A stretch of DNA of 64,000 nt. Source: Lytechinus pictus. Taxonomy: Eukaryota. Position numbers and translations under genes: made by a program. The first letter of the stretch is position 1, and each line of letters begins with the position of its first letter. The notes below the pieces were generated by a model. The model was not told the origin of the DNA. It was given only the letters and a program-made list of their open reading frames with translations, and searched no databases. The stretch spans positions 26,908,001-26,972,000 of the forward strand of contig NC_087255.1 in the NCBI RefSeq assembly GCF_037042905.1, given 5' to 3'. Positions 24,011 to 64,000 of the stretch are shown here, in pieces.

Positions 24011-27000
24011 CTAAAAGGGAAAAGAATTAGGAACAAACCGAAAGGGAAATATGTAAGCAGGTTTTCATATTTTGGCACCATATTGGGATTCAATGCAGAA
24101 CATATATGATTCAATGAATATCAAAATTCTTAAAAGATGACATCTTGATGAGTTTACTATTCAATTTCTTGCCAAAGGAAAGTATGCCATGGCTGGGATT
24201 TGAACCCATGGCCCTTTGTTTCAGAGACAGGAGACTTATCCACTGGGCCACAACACTTCACTTAAACAAACTTGAATCAGATTCCATAAACGAAATCAAA
24301 TCCAATAAAATCAGTTTTTAATTATGATAATGTAGTAAAATAAATGTTGAAGACTGAAACATTTACCTTGAGGAAGAGAGCTAGATATGCCTGTATGAGT
24401 TCATAATCTCTACCAGTTGTCAAGCGATGATGAAGGAAAGAGATAAATTGCCTCATAGCCAGCAACGACCCACCCCCAATAGGATCCAATGACCTCAGCT
24501 CCATGTCAATCTGAGATGGAGACAAGGACTTGAGGAACTTCAAGACTGCATCATCTGGGATATAAAAAAAAGGGAAACCACAATTAGATAGTCTATATTA
24601 TTTGTTGAATATTAACATTTACCCTAATATCACGGTATGGGTAAAGAAACTCTACTTTTTGGAGATGATGAGAATTGGCTGGGTAGATTACATAATTCTG
24701 ACTTACTTTTGTCTACACATAAAAATACTGCAGTATTCAGAGTTGTGCATGAACAGGGATTTAGAATGTGATTTGCATTGGTAATCTTACAGTAATACTG
24801 CAGTATTGGTGTATATGGACATGGTATCTAAGTTTTGAGAATTAATAATTTTGTACTCACAGTGCTCTGGGGTAGTCCCTTTCTCCAGAAGATTACAAAG
24901 GTCAGATTTCATCTCCATACTGGATAGATTCAAGACTTGGGAAGATGGCTAAATGCAGGATGAGAAAGGGGCACAAACTAAATAATTAAAAGTCGATAAC
25001 ACAAAGTGTACTATAAAAAGAATTTGAAATATTATGCAGTATTGATTTGTGTTCTAAATAGCATCTGTTTTGAGATGCGGAGTCATACACAAAGGAACAT
25101 CATCTCTTTTAGAACATACACTTTACATACTAAGAAAAATGGATCATAACAACAATAATTACAACATTAAACCTGTAAAATCACATAACTAATAAAAAGA
25201 CTCCATGTATCTGGATATCAGATCCAATCTGATGATTTGCGGTAAGAACAACTCCATGCATATCTGTTTTAACAACATACATTCTTCAATGTACACAAAC
25301 ACTGAATTATAATATAAAGGATAAAGGAGGGAGAGCTATGGAATCTCAAACAACATAGCAGTCCTCAAGAAGATTCATCCTGACACCTTATATCCAGTCG
25401 GACCATGACGATCATGAACAGCTTTTTTACAAAGGTAACTTACTTGATAACATAACAGAAATGTGGAGATAATGGTTGGACTAAAACCCATAAACAAAAC
25501 ATCAATACGCCACTACACAATTGCACAGTGGAATTGCGAAGCTGTGTTCAAGAAGCATTTCTTACCTTATCTGTCTCACCATCAGTGCTTGCAACAAACT
25601 TTGGTGTCAGACCCGCTACAGTAGGGAGGAAGAAGGGAGCTGCCTTGGGCGCCTTTGGAGGTTCTTTTGGCTTATTCCTTTTCTATTTATAAATGACAAT
25701 GGATAGGAAAAAAAAATCATTCAATCCAAGATATGAAACAATATGCAAGTGTTCAACTGAGCCCTGAAACAGAAGATTTAACAATTAATCGTGAGGCTGA
25801 TATTCACAATTGATCACACACAATAGTAAATGCAATCAATAATAGAAGCCAGCCCCATGATCTTGATCCCATGATAGCTAAACTTCATGTTGGAGATGCT
25901 TTGGTCAGTGTGTTTGAATGGAAATTGGGTGATCACCTTGAATACTAACAAAACAGAGACAAACTGAAGATTGGCAAAGCAGATAAGCACATGTGTAGGT
26001 GAGGATCCGGGGGGGGGGGGGGGGGGAGTGCAAGGTGCGGGCCCAACCCGTAAAATACGAAAATATAATTGTGCACCACAAAGAATACCTTCATTGCACA
26101 GTAAAATGAATGATGTTCAGGCTCTGGATCCGCACCTGATGTGGGACAGTCTATTATAATTGCTTGAAAAAAAGACCTTAACCGAGGCGGGAGAGCAACA
26201 ATATTTTGCTCATTCTTCAGTTATGGCAGATTTTCTACAAGAATAATTTGAGTTTGCCACTTATTCTTCAGTTATACATAGGTACACTTGGGTTATTATT
26301 CTAATAATAATAACACTTATTTACCCAGGGTAGCCACTCTCAGCTGTAAGCTGTTCTTCCAGCGGGCCCTGCATAACATAATATGTTAATATTACCCTTC
26401 TCCATTCTCATACGTTGAGTGCCTGACAAAAAGGCAGAAGGTCCCATTTTCAAAGTCTTTGGTATGTTTCAGCCGGGGATCGAACCCATGACCTCCCGTC
26501 CTTGAGGCGGGTACTCTACCACTGAGCCACCATGTCTATCAGATTACATTTGAACCTTTATGTATTTCAGGACTTAAACTTTGATAGACAAATGCTATAG
26601 GGTTTATTTCTATATTACAGCACAAGAAAAAAGGGGAAAAATCTCGCAAGGCCAATGAGATGGGCATTGAGATCAGCCATTCTGGCATCCACGGCCATAG
26701 CCTAAATCCCTCATCCTAACCTTACCTTGATAAGATCTAGGTGTGTAAGACTCTGCCATCTTGAGTTAGGAAGCAGTGAAAGGGTAATCAATTCTTCTCC
26801 AAGCTGGTCAGGTGATTTAAACTCTGTCAATTCCTCCCCTTCCTCCTCTTCTTCATCTTCCTCCATCTCTTCATCTCCATCCTCAACATCCACACCACTG
26901 GCTTGACCTTCATTCCGTTAGAATGGGGAAACATATGAAAATACCTAAATTAACCCAGAAGAGTACAGTGTTTTTGCAGTTTCTTGAATGCTAGCAAGCA

Positions 27001-30000
27001 TACATTTAATATGATAATAAAAAAATGTACTGAAACAGTTGATTCCAATTTCATTGGAGTATGGTGGTACTATTTATGAATAAAAGCCATTTAACTTTAG
27101 TAAATCTTTACACAAGGCAACAAATTTGGCAATGCAACAAATTTATATATCAATGAATGTAATAAACTTTTTGACCTTTATCCTAATTTTCTCTCCCGTG
27201 TGCATAAGTTGAACCCTAAAACAGTTATTCAGCTATTGCAAGAACAAGATACTTCAATATATGTAATGACCTCTCATCTCTGTCCTTTAATCTCATTCTT
27301 TAGTGACTGAAAGAAAAAAATATGGGCAGATAGACAACTAAAAAATATGCCTCCAGCAACCACATAGAATGAGTTGAGGCATACAAATTTATTTTCCTTG
27401 TGACTCCTCGAAGTTAAGTACTTTGTCTTGTCTAGGTATGATTCTAAACTGCCATTTAAACATCCATCATGGGAAAATAGAAAAGAATGAAAGTAACCCA
27501 GGGGAACATTTCATGAAAACGTATTCAGTAATTTGCACTGAAAACTGTTACAAGCTACTGAAATCCTTGCATCTGATTGGTTAAGAATGAATCAGTCAGT
27601 GAAAATCACTGACTATTTGCTTCATGAAACACAACTCACCCCTTTCTGCACTTGTTCCAGGTAGACTGATAAGAGTTGGTACATAATCCTCCGGTAGAGA
27701 TCTCATGCTAACATGGCTGTACAAAGTCTTGTTGGACCTGGGGGGTGTTTCACAAAGATATAAGTATGACTTAGGCCGCACTTAAGTGCCGACACGTACA
27801 TGATATGCAACGCGCAATCTTATTGATAAATACGCAGTAGTGCGCGTCTTCATGACACGATCTGCCCAATGTGGTCAAGCCTTTCATACCGTATGCAACT
27901 CGGTATTTAAGTACGACTCTGAGTCATACTTAAATCTTTGTGAAACATCCCCCTGATTTAGAAAGAATAGGCATTTTAATAAGCAATCAACAGGGGTGTG
28001 AATGATCACAAATAAAAAGAGCTGAAAAAAAGCTGAAATTGAAAGAGCTTCCATACTTTTGTAGAGATATAAAGCCAAAATAAGCTGAAATTAAGCTAAA
28101 ATCAAAAGAAAAAATAGCTGAAGTCAGCTAAAAAGCTGAACTCTCATACCTGGTACAATCATTGAAACAATCCTTTTGGATCAGATATTCTTATGATTAT
28201 TTTCAATTAGCATCTGTGCATATTTGTTTGCAATGCTATATGTTGAAGAGCTACTCATTAATCCTATCTAGCCCCAGCTGCTTTCCAGGGCCCCCGTCTT
28301 ACAAAGAGTTACGATTGATCCGATCAACCACAACTATGGATGGCCAGCAACGTCAACATCTAAAATGCATGTTTGTTCAAATTATTTTCTAGTTATGTTG
28401 TTAAGTCATACATCCATTGTTTTCTTGAAAATTCAGTGTGCTTTTCTTTGCATACAAAGGACGTTGTGCAAATTTCCTGGAGAAAAATTAAGATATGTTG
28501 GATTTCCGTATAGTTGATGTTGATCGGATCAATCGTAACTCTTGGTAAGACGGCCCTGATCTCTCAACCAAACTCTGAAATATGATTTACAACGTCTTCT
28601 TGGTGGGGAATCTTATCAGTGTGAAATCTATTTCTATAGCGATTCCATGAAGTATGAACATCTGACCCCTATGAGTGTGACCTTCCTGATTTAATCTGTC
28701 TCTGTATTTCCAGGTCATATATACTCAAAAGCTCTCCAACTATCATGGCTGGAACAGATCATGAAGTGAAGTAAGAATGGAGGAAAAAAAATGAGGATGA
28801 GACATACAAAACATTGATACTTTCATGCTATATTGCCCTCTAGAGAGCAAATGTGGATAGGTCTTACCATAGATAAATTCCCAGATCGTCAACATGTGAG
28901 GTAGCCAGGAAGTCATTGGTAGGAGAGAGAGTGAGGCTGGTAACAGCTGCATCTACAAGGAAACAATCTATTAACCTGTAGGAGACGATATTACATAGAG
29001 ATTGAGAGTTAAAGTACCACTAAACAGAAACACCTGTTATACAAGTATTTCACCAACCAACACTACTTCTACCACCTCCATCACCAACACTGCTACTTCA
29101 TTAAGCAAGGTGTAGGTTTGCTCTGTATAAATCATGCATACAAAATACATTGTGTGTCGAGGGCTCCGGCAGAGTAAGATTTCCAGAGCTTGTTTCACAA
29201 GGAGGTAGCATAACTGCATATTTGGTAACATTTCATTTCAAGCAAATTACCTTAGCACAATGATTTCTAAAACAGACTTCAGTGTTCCAAAAACAAGTTT
29301 TCTTTCTTAGCTTGTCATTTTGTTACTGTTGTTGCAATAGGTACCTGAACCATCCTCAATCTCTAATTGCATTTTGCCAAACATTCGAGTAGTAAATATA
29401 TTGGTAAACAATATCCTTTTGTATCTTGTAGATTAGTATATCCTATGTTTTATGTTAATAATCATAAGTATTCCAAGGCCCTACTCACAAGCTTTACTTT
29501 TAAAGGGGTCCTAAAACCAATTCGTCTATGCTATAATCTAATTGATGTATGTTTATGTACTCATTTACGTTGTATGTACATCTATTTTTATTATGATGTG
29601 ATGTTTTTGAATAAATAGACTTGAAAATTGATAATTATCAGCGGAAATGCATTCAAATCAATTGATTGTTTGACGTTTACTCCCTGGCCAAACCACTGGC
29701 ATTTACCATCACCACTACTACTACTTCCGTAAGAGAAATATTGGAAGAAGAAAGATAAAAAGGGAGGGGGAATAAAATGAGGAAAAGGAGATGAAAATAC
29801 AGCATGAGAATCTCTATGACTGCTGAAGTTAACATGGTTTCTTTATACAAATTTTCCTGCCGTAAAAAGCTACCAACAAATGAAATGAACTTTCTTCTTC
29901 GCATAACTTACTTAGCAGTAGGAAGGTCCCATGTTCTCACTGTACAGTCCATGGATGCGGTGATTAACCATCTAGCATCTTGGCTGAATGCCTGAGAATA

Positions 30001-42000: not shown

Positions 42001-45000
42001 ACTTGTAGCCATGCTGCCAGTCAATATTTATGTGTATAAAATAATAATAAATAATGAAATGTTATCATTATATAAAATTCAGTATGTGAACAAAAAAATT
42101 CTTACTTAGATTTGATATTCCAAAGTTGCATGCCACCTTGATGACTTCCAAGCAATATCTTGTTGAGGTATGTTGCTGGGTGCATCAGGGCCGATATTCT
42201 GAAGACACCGTTATCAAACGGCAGGTCTAAATAGAGCTCTAGGATGAAACAGTTGAAACAAAATTAGCAGCAATATCTTATTGGAGTGTGTTACCAAGGC
42301 CTCGTTACATAATGCTTAGTAATTGATCGTTTTTTATGCTTGAATACATTGGTCATTATGAATAATCAAGAATACAAATCAACTGCACGATTAATCACTA
42401 AGCTTTATGCAATGTTATGTGACAGAATCCAATAAAATGACCACCAAGTGTTTGTATGAATGAATGAATGAATGAATAAAAAATAAGTGCCAAGTGGATC
42501 TGGAGGAAAGTGTTAAATTGCTGAGAAATAGATAAAACATGGCATTCCAGCAAGGTGTAGGGTCCTCTTTTGAGCATTGATAAGTAATGTCCAACGAGTG
42601 CTTATCCGTGTTTGTGATCTTAAGGGTGATTATTTTCCGGCTTAGTTTTGTGATTTTAGAGGTAGGTTTATGCAAAGGAATCAGGTGGGTGTTTCATAAA
42701 GCTGTTCGTCGTAAGTTTAGAGTGACTTTACGCTCAACTGGTGAACCTTTCTTATGCTCTAAATAATCACCAGTGAAAATTTAATGGTGAATATCAGTTG
42801 CCATAAGAAAGGATCACCAGTCGTTCTTAAAGTCGCTCTAAACTTACAAACAGCTTTATGAAACAGCCCCCAGATCTAGATCTCTGTTGATAATGTGACA
42901 ATTAGCATTGACTTTAAAGACTCCATCATGAAATAATTGTTTGCTGCAACTACAATTAACTTTTAACTTGTTGCCTCCCGTTGGGGCTTTCATAAAGCTG
43001 TTCATAAGTTACAAGCGACTTCACGGATGACTGGTGATCCTTTCTTGATATAAATTATTCGCACCAAATTTTCATTGGTGAGGATTTAGCTTAGAAAGGA
43101 TCACCTGTCATTCATAAAGTCGCTCGTAACTTACGAACAACTTTATGAACAAGTGGAACGCCTCTGGCAGTCTCGCCTGCATTAAATATATATGATTTAA
43201 TATAGCAGCAGTGCTAACTTTGAAATTTACTGTAAGATAATCATTCACACAAACACCATTCATATAATGACATACCACGTTCATTGACCATAGATGACAT
43301 TTGAACGGTGACTTACATGTAAGACTTGTCAACTACACCCATGTCCACATTTCATTCACTCTATCCATAAACTTTCAAAGTTATGATGGCAATTCAACAA
43401 TTACCCCAACATGGCCTAAGTTTAATGACCTTAACTGACCTTTGACCTTGGTTTTGTGACCTGAAACTCACAGGGGATGTTCAGTGATACTTGATTACTC
43501 TTATATCCCAAGTTTTATGAAATAGATCCATAAACTTCAGAGTTAGAATGGTAATTCAACAAATACCCCAAACACCGCCAAAGTTCATTGACCTTAAATG
43601 ACCTTTGACCATGGTCATGTGACCTGAAACTCGTACAGGATGTTCAGTGTGACGACCCCAAGTCTGGATGTAGACTAGGAGTAATAAAAGAGTTCGCGGC
43701 TAGAGATCAAATACACAAACACGGCTTCCCTGTCTTTAAAAGATGTGTCATCGATTGTGAGGATTTGGGGTGACTTGAGAGTTGGAGAAGTTTAGGTTCT
43801 TGTGTGCTGAGATGTAGAGTTGGTCCTGGCCACGTAACATATTTGGGACCTTGTCCAGGAGTCGGAAAACAAGCCAGTTTTCTTGTCGAGGTAGTTCGTT
43901 TTCGTATTCCGTATACCGGTTATTACGTACAGTACATATGTATAATGCGCGAACGCTAGCACTGCGTGTAGTTATGTGCCTGTTCTATGCATGTGTGTGT
44001 ATGCACGTTTTGTGTGTGGAGCGTTTCGTTGGGCTCGTTTAGGCAACGGGTCACGCTCAATTTTTCTCGGATTTAGCCTTCGTTCAAGGCGCAGTGGATT
44101 TCTGGTATTTTAATTTGCTGCTAGGTTTCCTTTGCATTTTTGTGCTTGCTCACTGCATGTTTTGGATCAGTCTGTCTTGTTTACTAGCTGTTGTGCTGGT
44201 TTTGTCTCCTTAGTGGAGTTTGGTATATATTATAGACTGGTTGTTTGGTTTTGTGGTCTGAGCATAGTTTTATCTCAATGGCTGAGGATAGAGTGCGAAG
44301 TTTTGTTGATGGTCCCACACCAGAGCTGTTGGGGCAGTTGACAAAGGCTGAGTTAGTGGAAGCTGCTCGTCTTTTAGACGTTTCGGTTCGTCCTTCATTT
44401 AGAAAGGATGAGGTTAAGGACTGCATTCGTCAGTTTTTGGTCCAAACGGACATTTGGTCAGCGGATGTTGATTCTGAGGAGGAGGGGGATGATTCTGCGT
44501 CTTCTATTGGATCTCGTGATTCTGAGTTAAATCTAAAAACTCTGGAAGCACAGTTGAAATTGAAAGAGCTTGAACTTCGTACAAAAGAGGTTGAGCTACA
44601 GATGAAGAGCCTAGATTTGAAATCTAAGGAATTGAATGTGAGGAGTGGAGATTCCTCTGGCAAGTTTGATGCTTGTAAGTATGTTAGGTTGGTTCCTAAG
44701 TTTGATGAGAGTAAGGTAGAAGAGTTCTTTCAGCATTTTGAGAAGGTAGCTGTCAATTTAGGCTGGGAGAGATCTGTCTGGCCAACTTTGGTACAGAGTG
44801 TGCTCATCGGTAGGGCCCAGGAGGTTTATGCCTCATTGTCTGTTGAAGAGGGGGGTTGCTACGAGCAACTGAAGTCTTCTGTCTTGAGGGCTTATGAATT
44901 AGTGCCTGAGGCACATCGGCAAGCATTTCGCAATGCTAAAAAGGGCGAACGGGGCACTTATGTGGACCTGGTTCGTAAGAAGGTTGTTCATTTTGAACGA

Positions 45001-60937: not shown

Positions 60938-63900
60938 TCAGTCAGCGAGATAGAGTTTATTCACTTTAATCATCGTCAGCATCTCAAGATTTTTGGGTTT
61001 CAGCGCACATCTCTTCTTAGTAAGAACGTCCCCCGCAACACTGAACATGCGCTCACTTGTGACGCTTGATGGTGGACTAGCCAGCATAGCTGCGGCGACA
61101 GGCGCAAGGTGTGGGAACGTGCCACGATGATGTGACCAATATTCCAGCGGATCGTCTGTTGGCTGTATCCGTGGCTGAGAAAGATAGAGGTCCAATTCAT
61201 TCTCAAAGGCAACGACATACGCTGGTCTTCGTGGAACCGCGGCCATCTGATCATCTGAATCGTCTGATGATGAGGAAACCATTGCTCGTGCGATAGCAGA
61301 TGACAGGCTCAGTGGAGGTGGAGGAGCCTGAGCAGGAGCTGCTCCAGGATGTTCACGCATGGGAACGTTGGGTTCATCATCCTCGTGCTCATTGTGGTTG
61401 TCGTTCGAATCCATCGGTGACGGAACTGTAATGAGGTCTCCAGCGATCTCGAGGAGTTGTGTCTTGATGGCCTCTTTCGCTCCATCCCTCCTTGGGGCAA
61501 ACTTAGCTTTATACCTGAAAAATAGCATGTAAAACAAAAATCAAATGTAAGTTTATTTATTTTAATATAATCTTTGATTGAATCACATCAATAAAAAGCT
61601 GGAACAATAATTGCCGACTTGTAAATAAAACAGTGAGATTTTTGGCCTGAAACAAATGTAAGAATTATTATTTACTCAATTAAAGGAGTGGTTTGTTTTA
61701 AAAAAAAATAAATGGCTTAGGTTTCTTCACAAAATAGAATTAAAATTAAATCGAATTGATAGGAATGTTTTAACGAATTACGAATCCATCAATATTATGT
61801 CATTGATATACTATATTTATGAAATAAAAATCAGATAATGAATTCAGTTCAACTTCATACAAATTTTATGCTTGTATAGTTTTATTATTTTATGTTACCT
61901 TGGATTCATGAATGTTGAAGCGTGGAAAGTGCGGTAGACGATGTTTGGATCTGCAACAATGTCTGGGCATGATTCTGGATCTAAAATCCACTTCATTCTC
62001 TTCTTCATTCCGTCATGAAGATCACGAAGGATGCTCCCCACACCCCTTACTCGATCACCGTCCGTTTCGAGAGCCTCAAGTTGCCTCAACATCCCCTTCA
62101 CCAACGGGACGTACGAAGACAAGTCAGCATTTGCCGATGACACTGCCAGTGTTACATCCAAGGAAGGCTGAAGCACATTTATCAGATTGGATAGCACATC
62201 AAGGGCTTCAGACCAGTGCTGGAAAAGCATCGGGCGACGGAAATCTGGATAATTCCTCATTATTCTGTCATTTGCCAGCGCTTCTACTGCGTCCCTCTGA
62301 ACGATAATGGACTTCAACATATCCAGTGTTGAATTCCAGCGTGTCTCAACATCTCTGTGTAGAGTGATAAAACGACGTTCATCTCCGATGATTTCTTTGA
62401 AACGCCTCCTCACTGGTGCAGCGTTATTGACCTTGCTGACTAGGGTGCGTAAGGCGGCAATCGTATCCTTCACTGCTCTCTGTGTCTGGAGAGCCTTTTG
62501 AGTCTCTAGATTGATGCAGTGGGCCAAGCAGGGGACCCATCCCCTGCACAGCGGTTCCAAATCGGCTCCTCCCATCAGACACTTCCGAATGTTAGCCCCG
62601 TTGTCACTAACTGCAAACATGACATTTCGGATGGGAGTGTACTCTTGAATTACTGCCTCGATGTGTGTGCGGAGGTTGACGGCCGTTGTCGCATCCTCGA
62701 AGTCGCTCAGACTAACTAGTGCTTGGCGTCTCTTGTACTAGAGTTGCGGGAGAATAAGATTAAAAAAAATGGAAATAAAATCTGAACCTGACCCGCTGAC
62801 CGACTTTATTTCAGAACATCAGAGATCAATCTTTACATTAAAAAGATACAATGTAGAAATGAAAAAAAGGGGGGGGGTAATTTTCTTTGCCCGACATAAT
62901 GCATTGAACATTATTTAGTTTACTATTATTTTGTCAATCATATATATAACGCAAACATGCAAAGAGTAAGAATAAATGACTACAACATGAAATGATCAAG
63001 TATGTCTGCCAATCGACATGATCGAGTTCAGAATTTCACATTGCACCACTTTAAAAAGGGAAAACAAAGACTGTAAACGAACGTAAAATGAAGAATTCAG
63101 TTGGGAAGTGTGTTAACATTTTCTACAGAAGGCTTCATATCATGATAATTGTAATGATGTTTAAAATGAAAATACTTCTACTAGTACTAATAAAATATAA
63201 CAATCATTGTCATTATGCCTAACATAAAGCAAATGCGCTTTGTTTGAACTCTGAACCTCTTATGGCAATTTTAGATATAATGCAAAATTTCGAATAGATC
63301 ATATTTACTTAACAGAGAACCTGGCAAATTTAATTCAAATATGTATCATTCAATATTTACTTACGGAGTTTTCATGCAGCTCCATCCAGTGGAAAGTGAC
63401 ACACATATACTCAATGCTCTGATGAGATCTCCACAAGTCTGTCGTTAGGGAGATACTTCCAGGGATCGAATTTCGTATGTCAAAGACGAGTTTCTCCCTC
63501 ATCTCATTGTAGAGGCCAGGCACCACAGTTTGGGAGAAATACGGACGAGATGGGATGTTATATCGCGGATCCAGCTTCCCAAGAAGCTGCTTGAACCCGT
63601 CGTTTTCGACTATACTGAAGGGTCTAAGATCAAAACCCATCATTTTTCCGATGGCTCTGTCTATTTCCTGCGATCTGACGCTGTCCCTCCTGTATTTCGC
63701 CCTTCTGGCGATGTTTTCCGCCAAAGTTTCTTGCACATGGCCATCTCGTGGACGAGGCCGAGGGGCCACTGGATCACGTTCACGATTGGGTGCTGCTGGT
63801 GCTACCCCGGGGTTTGCTGCTGCTTCGGCGTCGCCGGCAGCTTGTGGAACAGCAGCTTCATTACGACGTCGATGACGAGCGTAAGCGAGGCAATCCATTA

Positions 63901-64000
63901 GATGACGACGCAGGTTACTCGTCCCTCTATTTCGGCCTTCTCCGGCCTTCCTCCTAGCATTGCAATAATTGCAGTGTGTATATGCCCTATCTGCCTCGTC
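60938..64000 (-). CDS. hAT transposase with N-terminal BED zinc finger (ZBED/Ac-like), 5'-partial, 3 exons
   Basis: complement join(63365->64000,61899-62737,60938-61514); CNYC...GTSNLRRHLMDC, SLTTDLW, VSDNGAN, CLAH, TRWNS, SVTSERMFS; phases 0 and 2 consistent, no stops. Confidence 0.92.

What the first reader, a model, noticed from the sequence alone, without database searches (positions are those of the whole stretch)
27640..27970. A MITE sits exactly in the CAG splice acceptor of a WDR36 exon and rebuilt it by target duplication
Seen: on the minus strand the sequence reads CTATTCTTTCTAAATCAG | GGGGATGTTTCACAAAGAT...ATCTTTGTGAAACACCCCC | CAG | exon (GTCCAACAAG). The 3-bp TSD is the acceptor CAG itself. 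The native pyrimidine tract with its CAG is now 215 nt upstream, and the exon's acceptor depends on the MITE's terminal C-run. Known: WDR36/UTP21 is a conserved ribosome-biogenesis factor, essential in yeast. Inference: two acceptors compete. Using the old one would add 215 nt and shift the frame (likely NMD), so the MITE either supplies a working 3' splice site (perhaps helped by its TIR hairpin looping out) or acts as a poison-exon extension.
Basis: partly seen in the sequence, partly recalled or inferred. Interest (0 to 1): 0.72.

Follow-up and report, generated by a model that had tools for sequence, protein, structure and literature searches.

The report
Transposon sitting on a splice acceptor
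A 212-base miniature transposon landed exactly on the CAG that ends an intron of the sea-urchin ribosome-assembly gene WDR36, and its 3-base target duplication rebuilt that splice signal next to the exon; this follows from where this transposon type lands, and which of the two CAGs the cell uses could not be measured.

Summary
On the minus strand a 212-nt MITE (27741-27952) has GGGG-starting inverted ends and CAG on both sides. It lies between the native pyrimidine tract with its CAG (27953-27955) and the exon that starts at 27737. Splicing 28868 to 27737 gives a peptide that aligns without a gap to human WDR36 663-720.

Strongylocentrotus purpuratus and Diadema setosum have the same intron position, one CAG (…cag|GTCCAACAAG) and no MITE, so these are orthologous empty sites.

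A CWG duplication with GGG-starting ends defines the NuwaI group of PIF/Harbinger-like transposons. A second such MITE (42682-42873, CAG/CAG) lies in the same gene. Reads show the family is highly repeated.

A DNA contig of a related species runs from the exon 23 nt into the MITE end. The insertion is therefore probably old and fixed.

Using the old CAG would add 215 nt and hit a stop after 15 codons, so the downstream CAG must be the productive acceptor. That is inferred: the RNA runs I laid barely covered WDR36, so junction use was not measured. Competition between the two sites, or a poison-exon role, is neither supported nor excluded.

The scan has already noted similar MITEs on splice donors elsewhere in this genome. 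Verdict: a tidy, tolerated splice-site replacement. It is a new member of a known kind and of modest interest.

The parts
27741..27952 (-). 212-nt non-coding MITE of NuwaI / PIF-Harbinger type, inserted at the intron-exon boundary
   Evidence: Inverted ends and CAG flanks. Absent from the orthologous site in S. purpuratus and Diadema. Highly repeated in reads.
27919..27952 (-). 5' terminal inverted repeat (in the gene's direction), GGGGATGTTTCACAAAGAT...
   Evidence: the repeat finder pair I1; motif search.
27741..27774 (-). 3' terminal inverted repeat, ...ATCTTTGTGAAACACCCCC; it supplies the C-run in front of the acceptor now next to the exon
27953..27955 (-). Upstream copy of the 3-bp target duplication, the old acceptor CAG, still behind its native pyrimidine tract
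   Evidence: The tract is homologous to the S. purpuratus acceptor tract. Crude PWM score 6.95 bits.
27738..27740 (-). Downstream copy of the target duplication, the CAG acceptor that abuts the exon; the productive site by inference
   Evidence: PWM score 8.46 bits, 38th percentile of 52 WDR36 acceptors.
27956..27985 (-). Native polypyrimidine tract and a branch-point-like GCTTATT of the pre-insertion acceptor
   Evidence: read from the sequence; the branch point is inferred.
27760..27764 (-). CTTAT, a branch-point-like motif inside the MITE, with its A 24 nt upstream of the exon
   Evidence: Read from the sequence; inferred, not tested.
27640..27737 (-). 98-nt WDR36 exon (SNKTLYSHVSMRSLPEDYVPTLISLPGTSAER), donor GGG|gtgagt
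   Evidence: Same length as the S. purpuratus exon.
28868..28975 (-). Upstream WDR36 exon; donor TG|gtaaga after 28868

Best explanation
A non-autonomous PIF/Harbinger-like transposon of the NuwaI type inserted in the Lytechinus lineage. This type has an obligate CWG target and ends that start GGG. It landed in the CAG that was the 3' splice site of a conserved WDR36 intron. Staggered cutting and repair duplicated the CAG. One copy stayed with the native branch point and pyrimidine tract, 215 nt upstream. The other copy now abuts the exon and is preceded by the element's own end (...CTTATATCTTTGTGAAACACCCCC). Because both ends are GGG.../...CCC, either orientation would leave CCCC-CAG| in front of the exon, so an acceptor-like signal is rebuilt automatically. 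The exon-proximal CAG must be the productive acceptor, because the old one gives a frameshift and an early stop in a conserved gene. The insertion is a tolerated by-product of target preference that simply lengthened the intron, not a control device. Shown: the anatomy, the empty orthologous sites, the family features and the high repeat number. Inferred: that the downstream CAG is used, that the insertion is fixed and old, and how the 3' site is recognised. On that last point I lean slightly (about 55:45) to the element's own CTTAT and C-run over a looped-out hairpin that reuses the native branch point. I put the chance that the old CAG is used in 10% or more of transcripts at about one in three.
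For: Exact anatomy with a CAG duplication and 15/16 matching ends. The spliced peptide is gap-free against human WDR36 and colinear with the Diadema and S. purpuratus proteins. Both outgroups have ...cag|GTCCAACAAG with one CAG and no MITE, and the L. pictus upstream flank is homologous to the S. purpuratus tract. NuwaI is defined by a CWG duplication and GGG-starting ends of 12-61 bp (PMC4482050). A second related MITE with CAG/CAG flanks lies at 42682-42873. Loose ends at a third MITE read ...CAGGG or ...CTGGGG. Read depth over the MITE is hundreds-fold in RNA, and about 2-4 x 10^5 summed word depth against about 15-25 in unique flanks in a related species' DNA. That species has a single-copy-depth contig (record 5, 208 nt, 95% alike) running from the exon through CAG and 23 nt into the MITE end. 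The new acceptor scores within the range of real WDR36 acceptors (8.46 bits against a median of 9.5), and the old one is lower in its present context (6.95). The old acceptor gives a stop after 15 codons. All 20 WDR36 exons in the window keep an open frame.
Against: No RNA junction was seen. Runs X21-X23 gave depth 0-3 on the WDR36 exons, and the listed joints were all repeat noise at 85% likeness. The old acceptor keeps an intact tract, a CAG and a G at +1, so by sequence it should still be recognisable. The predicted hairpin (-95.7 kcal/mol) would pair the MITE's 3' end and could hide the proposed internal branch point and C-run. The related-species contig reaches only 23-26 letters beyond the junction, below the tool's own 31-letter bar for bridging. 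No DNA run of the same species was available, so polymorphism was not tested. The PWM rests on only 52 sites.
Confidence: 0.78

Rival explanations
1. The two CAGs compete to a meaningful degree. A sizeable share of transcripts uses the old acceptor, gains 215 nt with an early stop and is degraded. On this reading the MITE lowers or tunes WDR36 output as a poison-exon extension.
For: The native tract, a branch-point-like GCTTATT and CAG|G remain intact 215 nt upstream. The old site still scores 6.95 bits, inside the range of real acceptors (1.3-15.9). The stop comes after 15 codons, with three exon junctions downstream in the laid stretch, which fits NMD rules. The hairpin puts both CAGs at the stem base in equivalent positions.
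Against: No read shows the 28868->27952 junction, though coverage was too thin to count as absence. Nothing points to regulation. The same kind of insertion is expected by chance from CWG targeting. Earlier follow-ups on look-alike acceptor or donor cases in this genome reported only the productive site in use (notes seen; not checked here).
Confidence: 0.15
2. The MITE is a young insertion polymorphism, or specific to the reference haplotype. The working mRNA comes mainly from MITE-free alleles, and the inserted allele may be impaired.
For: Sea-urchin populations are highly polymorphic (general knowledge). An earlier follow-up in this genome reported a young MITE inside a coding exon as a probable null allele (note s1-323374; not checked here). 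The terminal repeats are still 15/16 identical and the old CAG and tract are undecayed. No same-species DNA run was available.
Against: A contig of a related species (about 95% identical, single-copy depth) continues from the exon into the MITE end (record 5), which places the insertion before the species split. The inner arms have diverged to 81% over 48 nt.
Confidence: 0.07

Closest known systems
NuwaI group of the PHIS (PIF/Harbinger-ISL2EU-Spy) transposon superfamily (Han et al. 2015, Mob DNA 6:12, PMC4482050)
   Same: 3-bp CWG target duplication, inverted ends that begin GGG with length within 12-61 bp, and an animal host.
   Different: That paper lists fish, a beetle, a crustacean, a mollusc and an anthozoan, but no echinoderm. 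This is a 212-nt non-coding derivative, and its transposase partner was not looked for here.
Introner elements: MITE-like transposons that create introns and take one splice site from their target duplication (Micromonas, Symbiodinium and others; bioRxiv 10.1101/2022.06.06.494994; review PMC11282704)
   Same: A TIR element whose target duplication provides the AG of a 3' splice site, so the insertion is spliced out without harm.
   Different: No intron was created. The intron position is shared with S. purpuratus and Diadema, and the element only lengthened an existing intron from its 3' end.
Harbinger-type MITEs on splice donors noted earlier by this scan in the same genome (s1-311593, s1-324885)
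   Same: Same genome, the same CWG-targeting kind of element, landed exactly on an exon-intron boundary, with the splice signal replaced.
   Different: Those are donor sites where the element's own GT serves. Here it is the acceptor, and the duplicated CAG plus the terminal C-run serve. Those notes were not re-checked here.
Hairpins between branch point and 3' splice site that hide or bring near AG dinucleotides (yeast 3' splice-site selection; recalled from memory, not looked up)
   Same: A predicted stable stem (-95.7 kcal/mol, z -7.65) puts the native tract and the distal CAG close together.
   Different: The structure is only predicted. Both CAGs sit symmetrically at the stem base, so the model does not say which one is chosen.

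Membership tests
NuwaI-type PIF/Harbinger-like MITE | 3-bp target site duplication of sequence CWG | tested here: met
   CAG at 27953-27955 and 27738-27740 (minus strand). The outgroup empty sites have a single CAG.
NuwaI-type PIF/Harbinger-like MITE | Terminal inverted repeats of 12-61 bp whose first three bases are usually GGG | tested here: met
   GGGGATGTTTCACAAAGAT / GGGGGTGTTTCACAAAGAT, 15/16 at the tips and 81% over 48 nt; criterion from PMC4482050.
NuwaI-type PIF/Harbinger-like MITE | Many copies in the genome, with variable flanks outside the CWG | tested here: inconclusive
   Read depth is hundreds- to ten-thousand-fold above the unique flanks, and one related copy lies in the window. 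Individual copies of this exact family with their flanks were not obtained. A metagenome scan gave only 18-19-nt chance hits.
NuwaI-type PIF/Harbinger-like MITE | An autonomous partner with a DDE transposase and a Myb/SANT protein that shares the ends | not tested
None in this window.
MITE (general) | Short, non-coding, with an empty site showing precise insertion | tested here: met
   212 nt with no ORF of note. Orthologous empty sites in two urchins.
Introner (intron-creating transposon) | The element makes up a new intron at a position that lacks an intron in relatives | tested here: not met
   The intron is present at the identical codon position in S. purpuratus (458 nt) and Diadema (889 nt).
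Poison exon / regulated unproductive splicing | A measurable stop-containing isoform, raised when NMD is blocked, and conserved use | tested here: inconclusive
   RNA coverage of WDR36 was near zero in the runs laid. Only the predicted stop was shown.

The most novel reading that the evidence does not exclude
Sea-urchin NuwaI-type MITEs are pre-adapted to be invisible to splicing. A CWG duplication plus GGG.../...CCC ends always yields CCC-CAG| acceptors, and sub-families whose end starts GT (such as 42682, CAG|GTGGGT) yield donors. On this reading they can land on, replace, and perhaps create splice sites and introns in an animal genome. The WDR36 copy would then be a natural case in which a transposon hairpin decides between two equivalent acceptors.
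Probability: 0.1. Interest if true: 0.7.

Novelty: new member of a known kind. Interest (0 to 1): 0.33.

Why it matters
It is a clean, datable natural experiment on 3' splice-site choice. Two identical CAGs lie 215 nt apart. One keeps the native branch point and pyrimidine tract, and the other has only transposon sequence in front of it. Both sit in a conserved gene with known empty sites in two relatives. It also shows why CWG-targeting transposons with GGG/CCC ends can land on splice sites without destroying them, which helps explain their density in urchin genes. On present evidence it does not reveal a new mechanism or a function.

Tried and rejected
Repeat-derived reads swamped the tables, WDR36 exons had depth 0-3 in three rRNA-depleted RNA runs, and no WDR36 junction was listed. 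Acceptor usage therefore stays unmeasured.

2. I looked for cDNA-derived proteins of this species in three searches: the 61-aa junction peptide, Diadema WDR36 region 560-760 and S. purpuratus residues 570-770. No Lytechinus protein or fragment was present. P0155, a Logan transcript, is another urchin and less similar than S. purpuratus.

3. A metagenome scan for the end motif gave five 18-19-nt matches with no further homology. These are chance hits or unrelated.

4. The end motif is absent from the S. purpuratus and Diadema WDR36 loci.

5. Rfam found nothing in the MITE or its intron; the best hit had E 0.92.

6. Chance hairpin rather than transposon: rejected. The end motif is enriched (4 found against 0.06 expected), the flanks are CAG/CAG, the orthologous sites are empty and read depth is massive.

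7. Introner reading: rejected, because the intron pre-exists in both outgroups.

8. I did not hand in the full spliced L. pictus protein, because it has no reference and would have had to be typed.

Full report
**What is there**

The minus strand of 27500-28100 reads: native tract ...gcctattctttctaaatCAG (CAG = 27955-27953), then GGGGATGTTTCACAAAGATTTAAGTATGACTC ... GTCATACTTATATCTTTGTGAAACACCCCC (27952-27741, 212 nt), then CAG (27740-27738), then the exon GTCCAACAAG... from 27737.
- The two ends are inverted repeats. The repeat finder gives 48-nt arms at 81% complementarity, and the terminal 16 nt match 15/16.
- The 18-nt end motif, allowing up to 3 mismatches, occurs four times in the 64-kb window against 0.06 expected.
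- Two of those matches are this element. The other two are the ends of a second element at 42682-42873.

**The gene**

The window carries WDR36/UTP21 on the minus strand, from about 52,000 to 23,864.
- tblastn with the Diadema setosum and S. purpuratus proteins finds 20 colinear exons, and a small splice mapper placed their borders.
- The upstream exon is 28975-28868, with donor TG|gtaaga.
- The exon behind the MITE is 27737-27640 (98 nt, donor GGG|gtgagt).
- Joining 28868 to 27737 gives ...HVDDLGIYLW|SNKTLYSHVSMRSLPEDYVPTLISLPGT. This aligns without a gap to human WDR36 residues 663-720 in the SSU processome structure 7MQ8 (E 3e-20).

**Empty sites**

I fetched the genomic loci of S. purpuratus WDR36 (L001) and Diadema setosum WDR36 (L002).
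- Both have an intron at the identical position, of 458 and 889 nt against 1130 nt here.
- Both have a single acceptor: Sp ...attcttattttcctcaatgtcag|GTCCAACAAGAC and Ds ...cattattatctgtccag|GTCCAACAAGAC.
- Removing the MITE and one CAG from this window gives ...gcctattctttctaaatcag|GTCCAACAAGAC. Its tract is recognisably homologous to that of S. purpuratus.
- The end motif is absent from both outgroup loci.
- This is a textbook insertion with a 3-bp duplication of the acceptor CAG, derived in the Lytechinus lineage.

**What kind of element**

A CWG duplication with ends that start GGG is the published signature of the NuwaI group of the PIF/Harbinger-like PHIS superfamily. Its ends are 12-61 bp and it is known only from animals (PMC4482050).
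- The second copy in the window (42682-42873) has related ends (GTGGGTGTTTCATAAAGCTG / GGGGCTGTTTCATAAAGCTG) and CAG on both sides.
- A third MITE in the same intron (28289-28558, 44-nt arms at 93%) is flanked by CAG and CTG.
- Thousands of reads from other copies of that third family end at its border, with loose-end consensus ...GATCAGGG...AATCAGGGG or ...ACCTGGGG. That is CWG with a variable middle base.
- In a blind scan of the window for CWG...CWG pairs bracketing 13/16 or better inverted ends, the only two hits with identical duplications were these two GGGnTGTTTCA elements.

**Copy number**

Over 27756-28003 the RNA runs show depth 300-580 on both strands. Unique intron nearby shows about 0-2. 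The related species' DNA contigs sum to 2-4 x 10^5 against 15-25 in the flanks. The tool warns that this is not a copy number, but the family is clearly highly repeated in both species.

**Age**

The runs found fall into two species labels.
- Organism A has RNA only and holds 12-15% of the words, about the exon share. Earlier notes of this scan name the window's species as Lytechinus pictus. I did not verify that, beyond 85-95% protein identity to S. purpuratus.
- Organism B has DNA and holds 10-11% of the words, which implies roughly 93% identity, so it is a close relative.
- In B's run X10 a 208-nt contig at single-copy depth (18.7) aligns end to end to 27557-27763 with 10 mismatches and 1 gap (record 5). 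It covers the exon, the CAG and 23 nt of the MITE end.
- That is below the tool's 31-letter bar for bridging, so I count it as probable, not proven. If B lacked the MITE, the contig should have continued into ATTTAGAAAG instead.
- On this basis the insertion predates the split of the two species.

**Consequences for splicing**

If the old CAG were used, the exon would gain 215 nt and the frame would read ...GIYLW GMFHKDLSMTQSRT*, a stop after 15 codons. The productive mRNA must therefore use the CAG at 27740-27738.

I built a crude weight matrix from 52 WDR36 acceptors of the three urchins.

| Site | Score (bits) | Percentile among the 52 |
|---|---|---|
| New site tatctttgtgaaacaccccccag\|GTC | 8.46 | 38th |
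| Old site in its present context (...taaatcag\|GGG) | 6.95 | 19th |
| Rebuilt pre-insertion site | 9.82 | 56th |

- The new site is an ordinary acceptor by sequence, and the old one is somewhat weakened but not dead.
- The element carries a branch-point-like CTTAT with its A at -24.
- Because both ends are GGG.../...CCC, either orientation would have put CCCC-CAG in front of the exon. This element type rebuilds an acceptor automatically when it lands on one.
- As RNA, the MITE with its flanks folds into one long hairpin (-95.7 kcal/mol; shuffles average -58; z -7.65). The two CAGs face each other at the base of the stem.
It could equally hide the element's own branch point. The model does not discriminate.

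**What could not be shown**

- The single read-laying run gave depth 0-3 on the WDR36 exons in three rRNA-depleted RNA runs. At 85% likeness the joint tables were filled by repeat noise, and no WDR36 junction was listed.
- The RNA contig runs X1-X8 hold a share of words (0.12-0.15) slightly above what the four exons alone would give (about 0.10 by my count). This fits an expressed, spliced mRNA but says nothing on the junction.
- Three protein searches found no Lytechinus WDR36 product.
- The use of the downstream CAG rests on the open frame across all exons, the conservation of the gene and the probable age of the insertion.
- The share of transcripts lost to the old CAG is unknown. I estimate about one chance in three that it is 10% or more.

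**Is the placement surprising?**

Not very.
- The element can only insert at CWG, and CAG is the consensus acceptor.
- CWG makes up about 2.5% of positions in this window (1603 in 64 kb).
- With a family this abundant, hits on acceptor CAGs and on CAG|GT donors are expected. Those that rebuild a working signal are the ones that survive.
- The flanks seen here (AAATCAG|...|CAGGTCC, GGAATCAG|...|CAGATCT, TTTCCAG|...|CTGATCT, plus the loose-end consensus) suggest a wider ATCWGRTC-like preference. That is also compatible with ...CAG|GT.
- Earlier follow-ups of this scan describe Harbinger-type MITEs sitting on splice donors in this same genome, with the same conclusion. I did not re-test them.

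**Comparison with known systems**

- It works like the splice-site co-option of Introner elements, where the target duplication supplies the AG.
- It is not an introner, because the intron pre-exists in both outgroups.
- It fits NuwaI-type MITEs on every feature I could test. The transposase partner was not sought.

**Verdict**

The element is a NuwaI-type MITE that replaced the 3' end of an existing intron. The insertion is probably old and neutral. The competition or poison-exon idea remains open and is easy to test. Interest is modest.

Noticed in passing
window 27502-27638: Another inverted-repeat element (GGGGAACATTTCATGAAAACG... / ...CTTCATGAAACACAACTCACCCC) fills the start of the next intron. 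It ends within a few bases of the donor of the same exon (GGG|gtgagttgtgtttcatgaag), so its outer end may contribute the GTGAGT. It has CAG on its far side (27499-27501) but no clean CWG on the exon side. It is highly repeated in reads and also present in the related species' contigs (records 4 and 5). The 98-nt exon is thus sandwiched between two MITEs.
   Followed up: partly
window 28289-28558: A third MITE in the same intron. It has 44-nt arms at 93% (GGCCCCCGTCTTACAAAGAGTTACG...) and flanks CAG on the left and CTG on the right. It has the highest read depth of the stretch (RNA about 2500 on each strand), and the loose-end consensus is ...CAGGG or ...CTGGGG.
   Followed up: partly
window 42682-42873: A related MITE with a CAG/CAG duplication in an upstream WDR36 intron. 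One end reads CAG|GTGGGT, which looks like a splice donor.
   Followed up: partly
window 27990-28130: A short TTTCAGCTT / TTTAGCTTAA-rich stretch in the intron holds decoy acceptors that score higher than the real one in my crude matrix (11.4 bits at 28021, 9.9 at 28095). It shows strand-biased RNA depth (about 76-79 against 4-10).
   Followed up: no
window 26300-26536 (minus strand): A tRNA-derived SINE sits in the next intron. Rfam tRNA matches at 29.7 bits, E 3e-4, at 26465-26536. RNA depth is strongly strand-specific (up to about 900), and many molecules end at 26531, as expected for Pol III transcripts of a SINE family.
   Followed up: partly
window 60941-64000 (minus strand): Long open frames resemble a hAT/ZBED-type transposase, with a BED-like N-terminus and a C-terminal dimerisation-like stretch. 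They were not examined.
   Followed up: no
   Followed up: no
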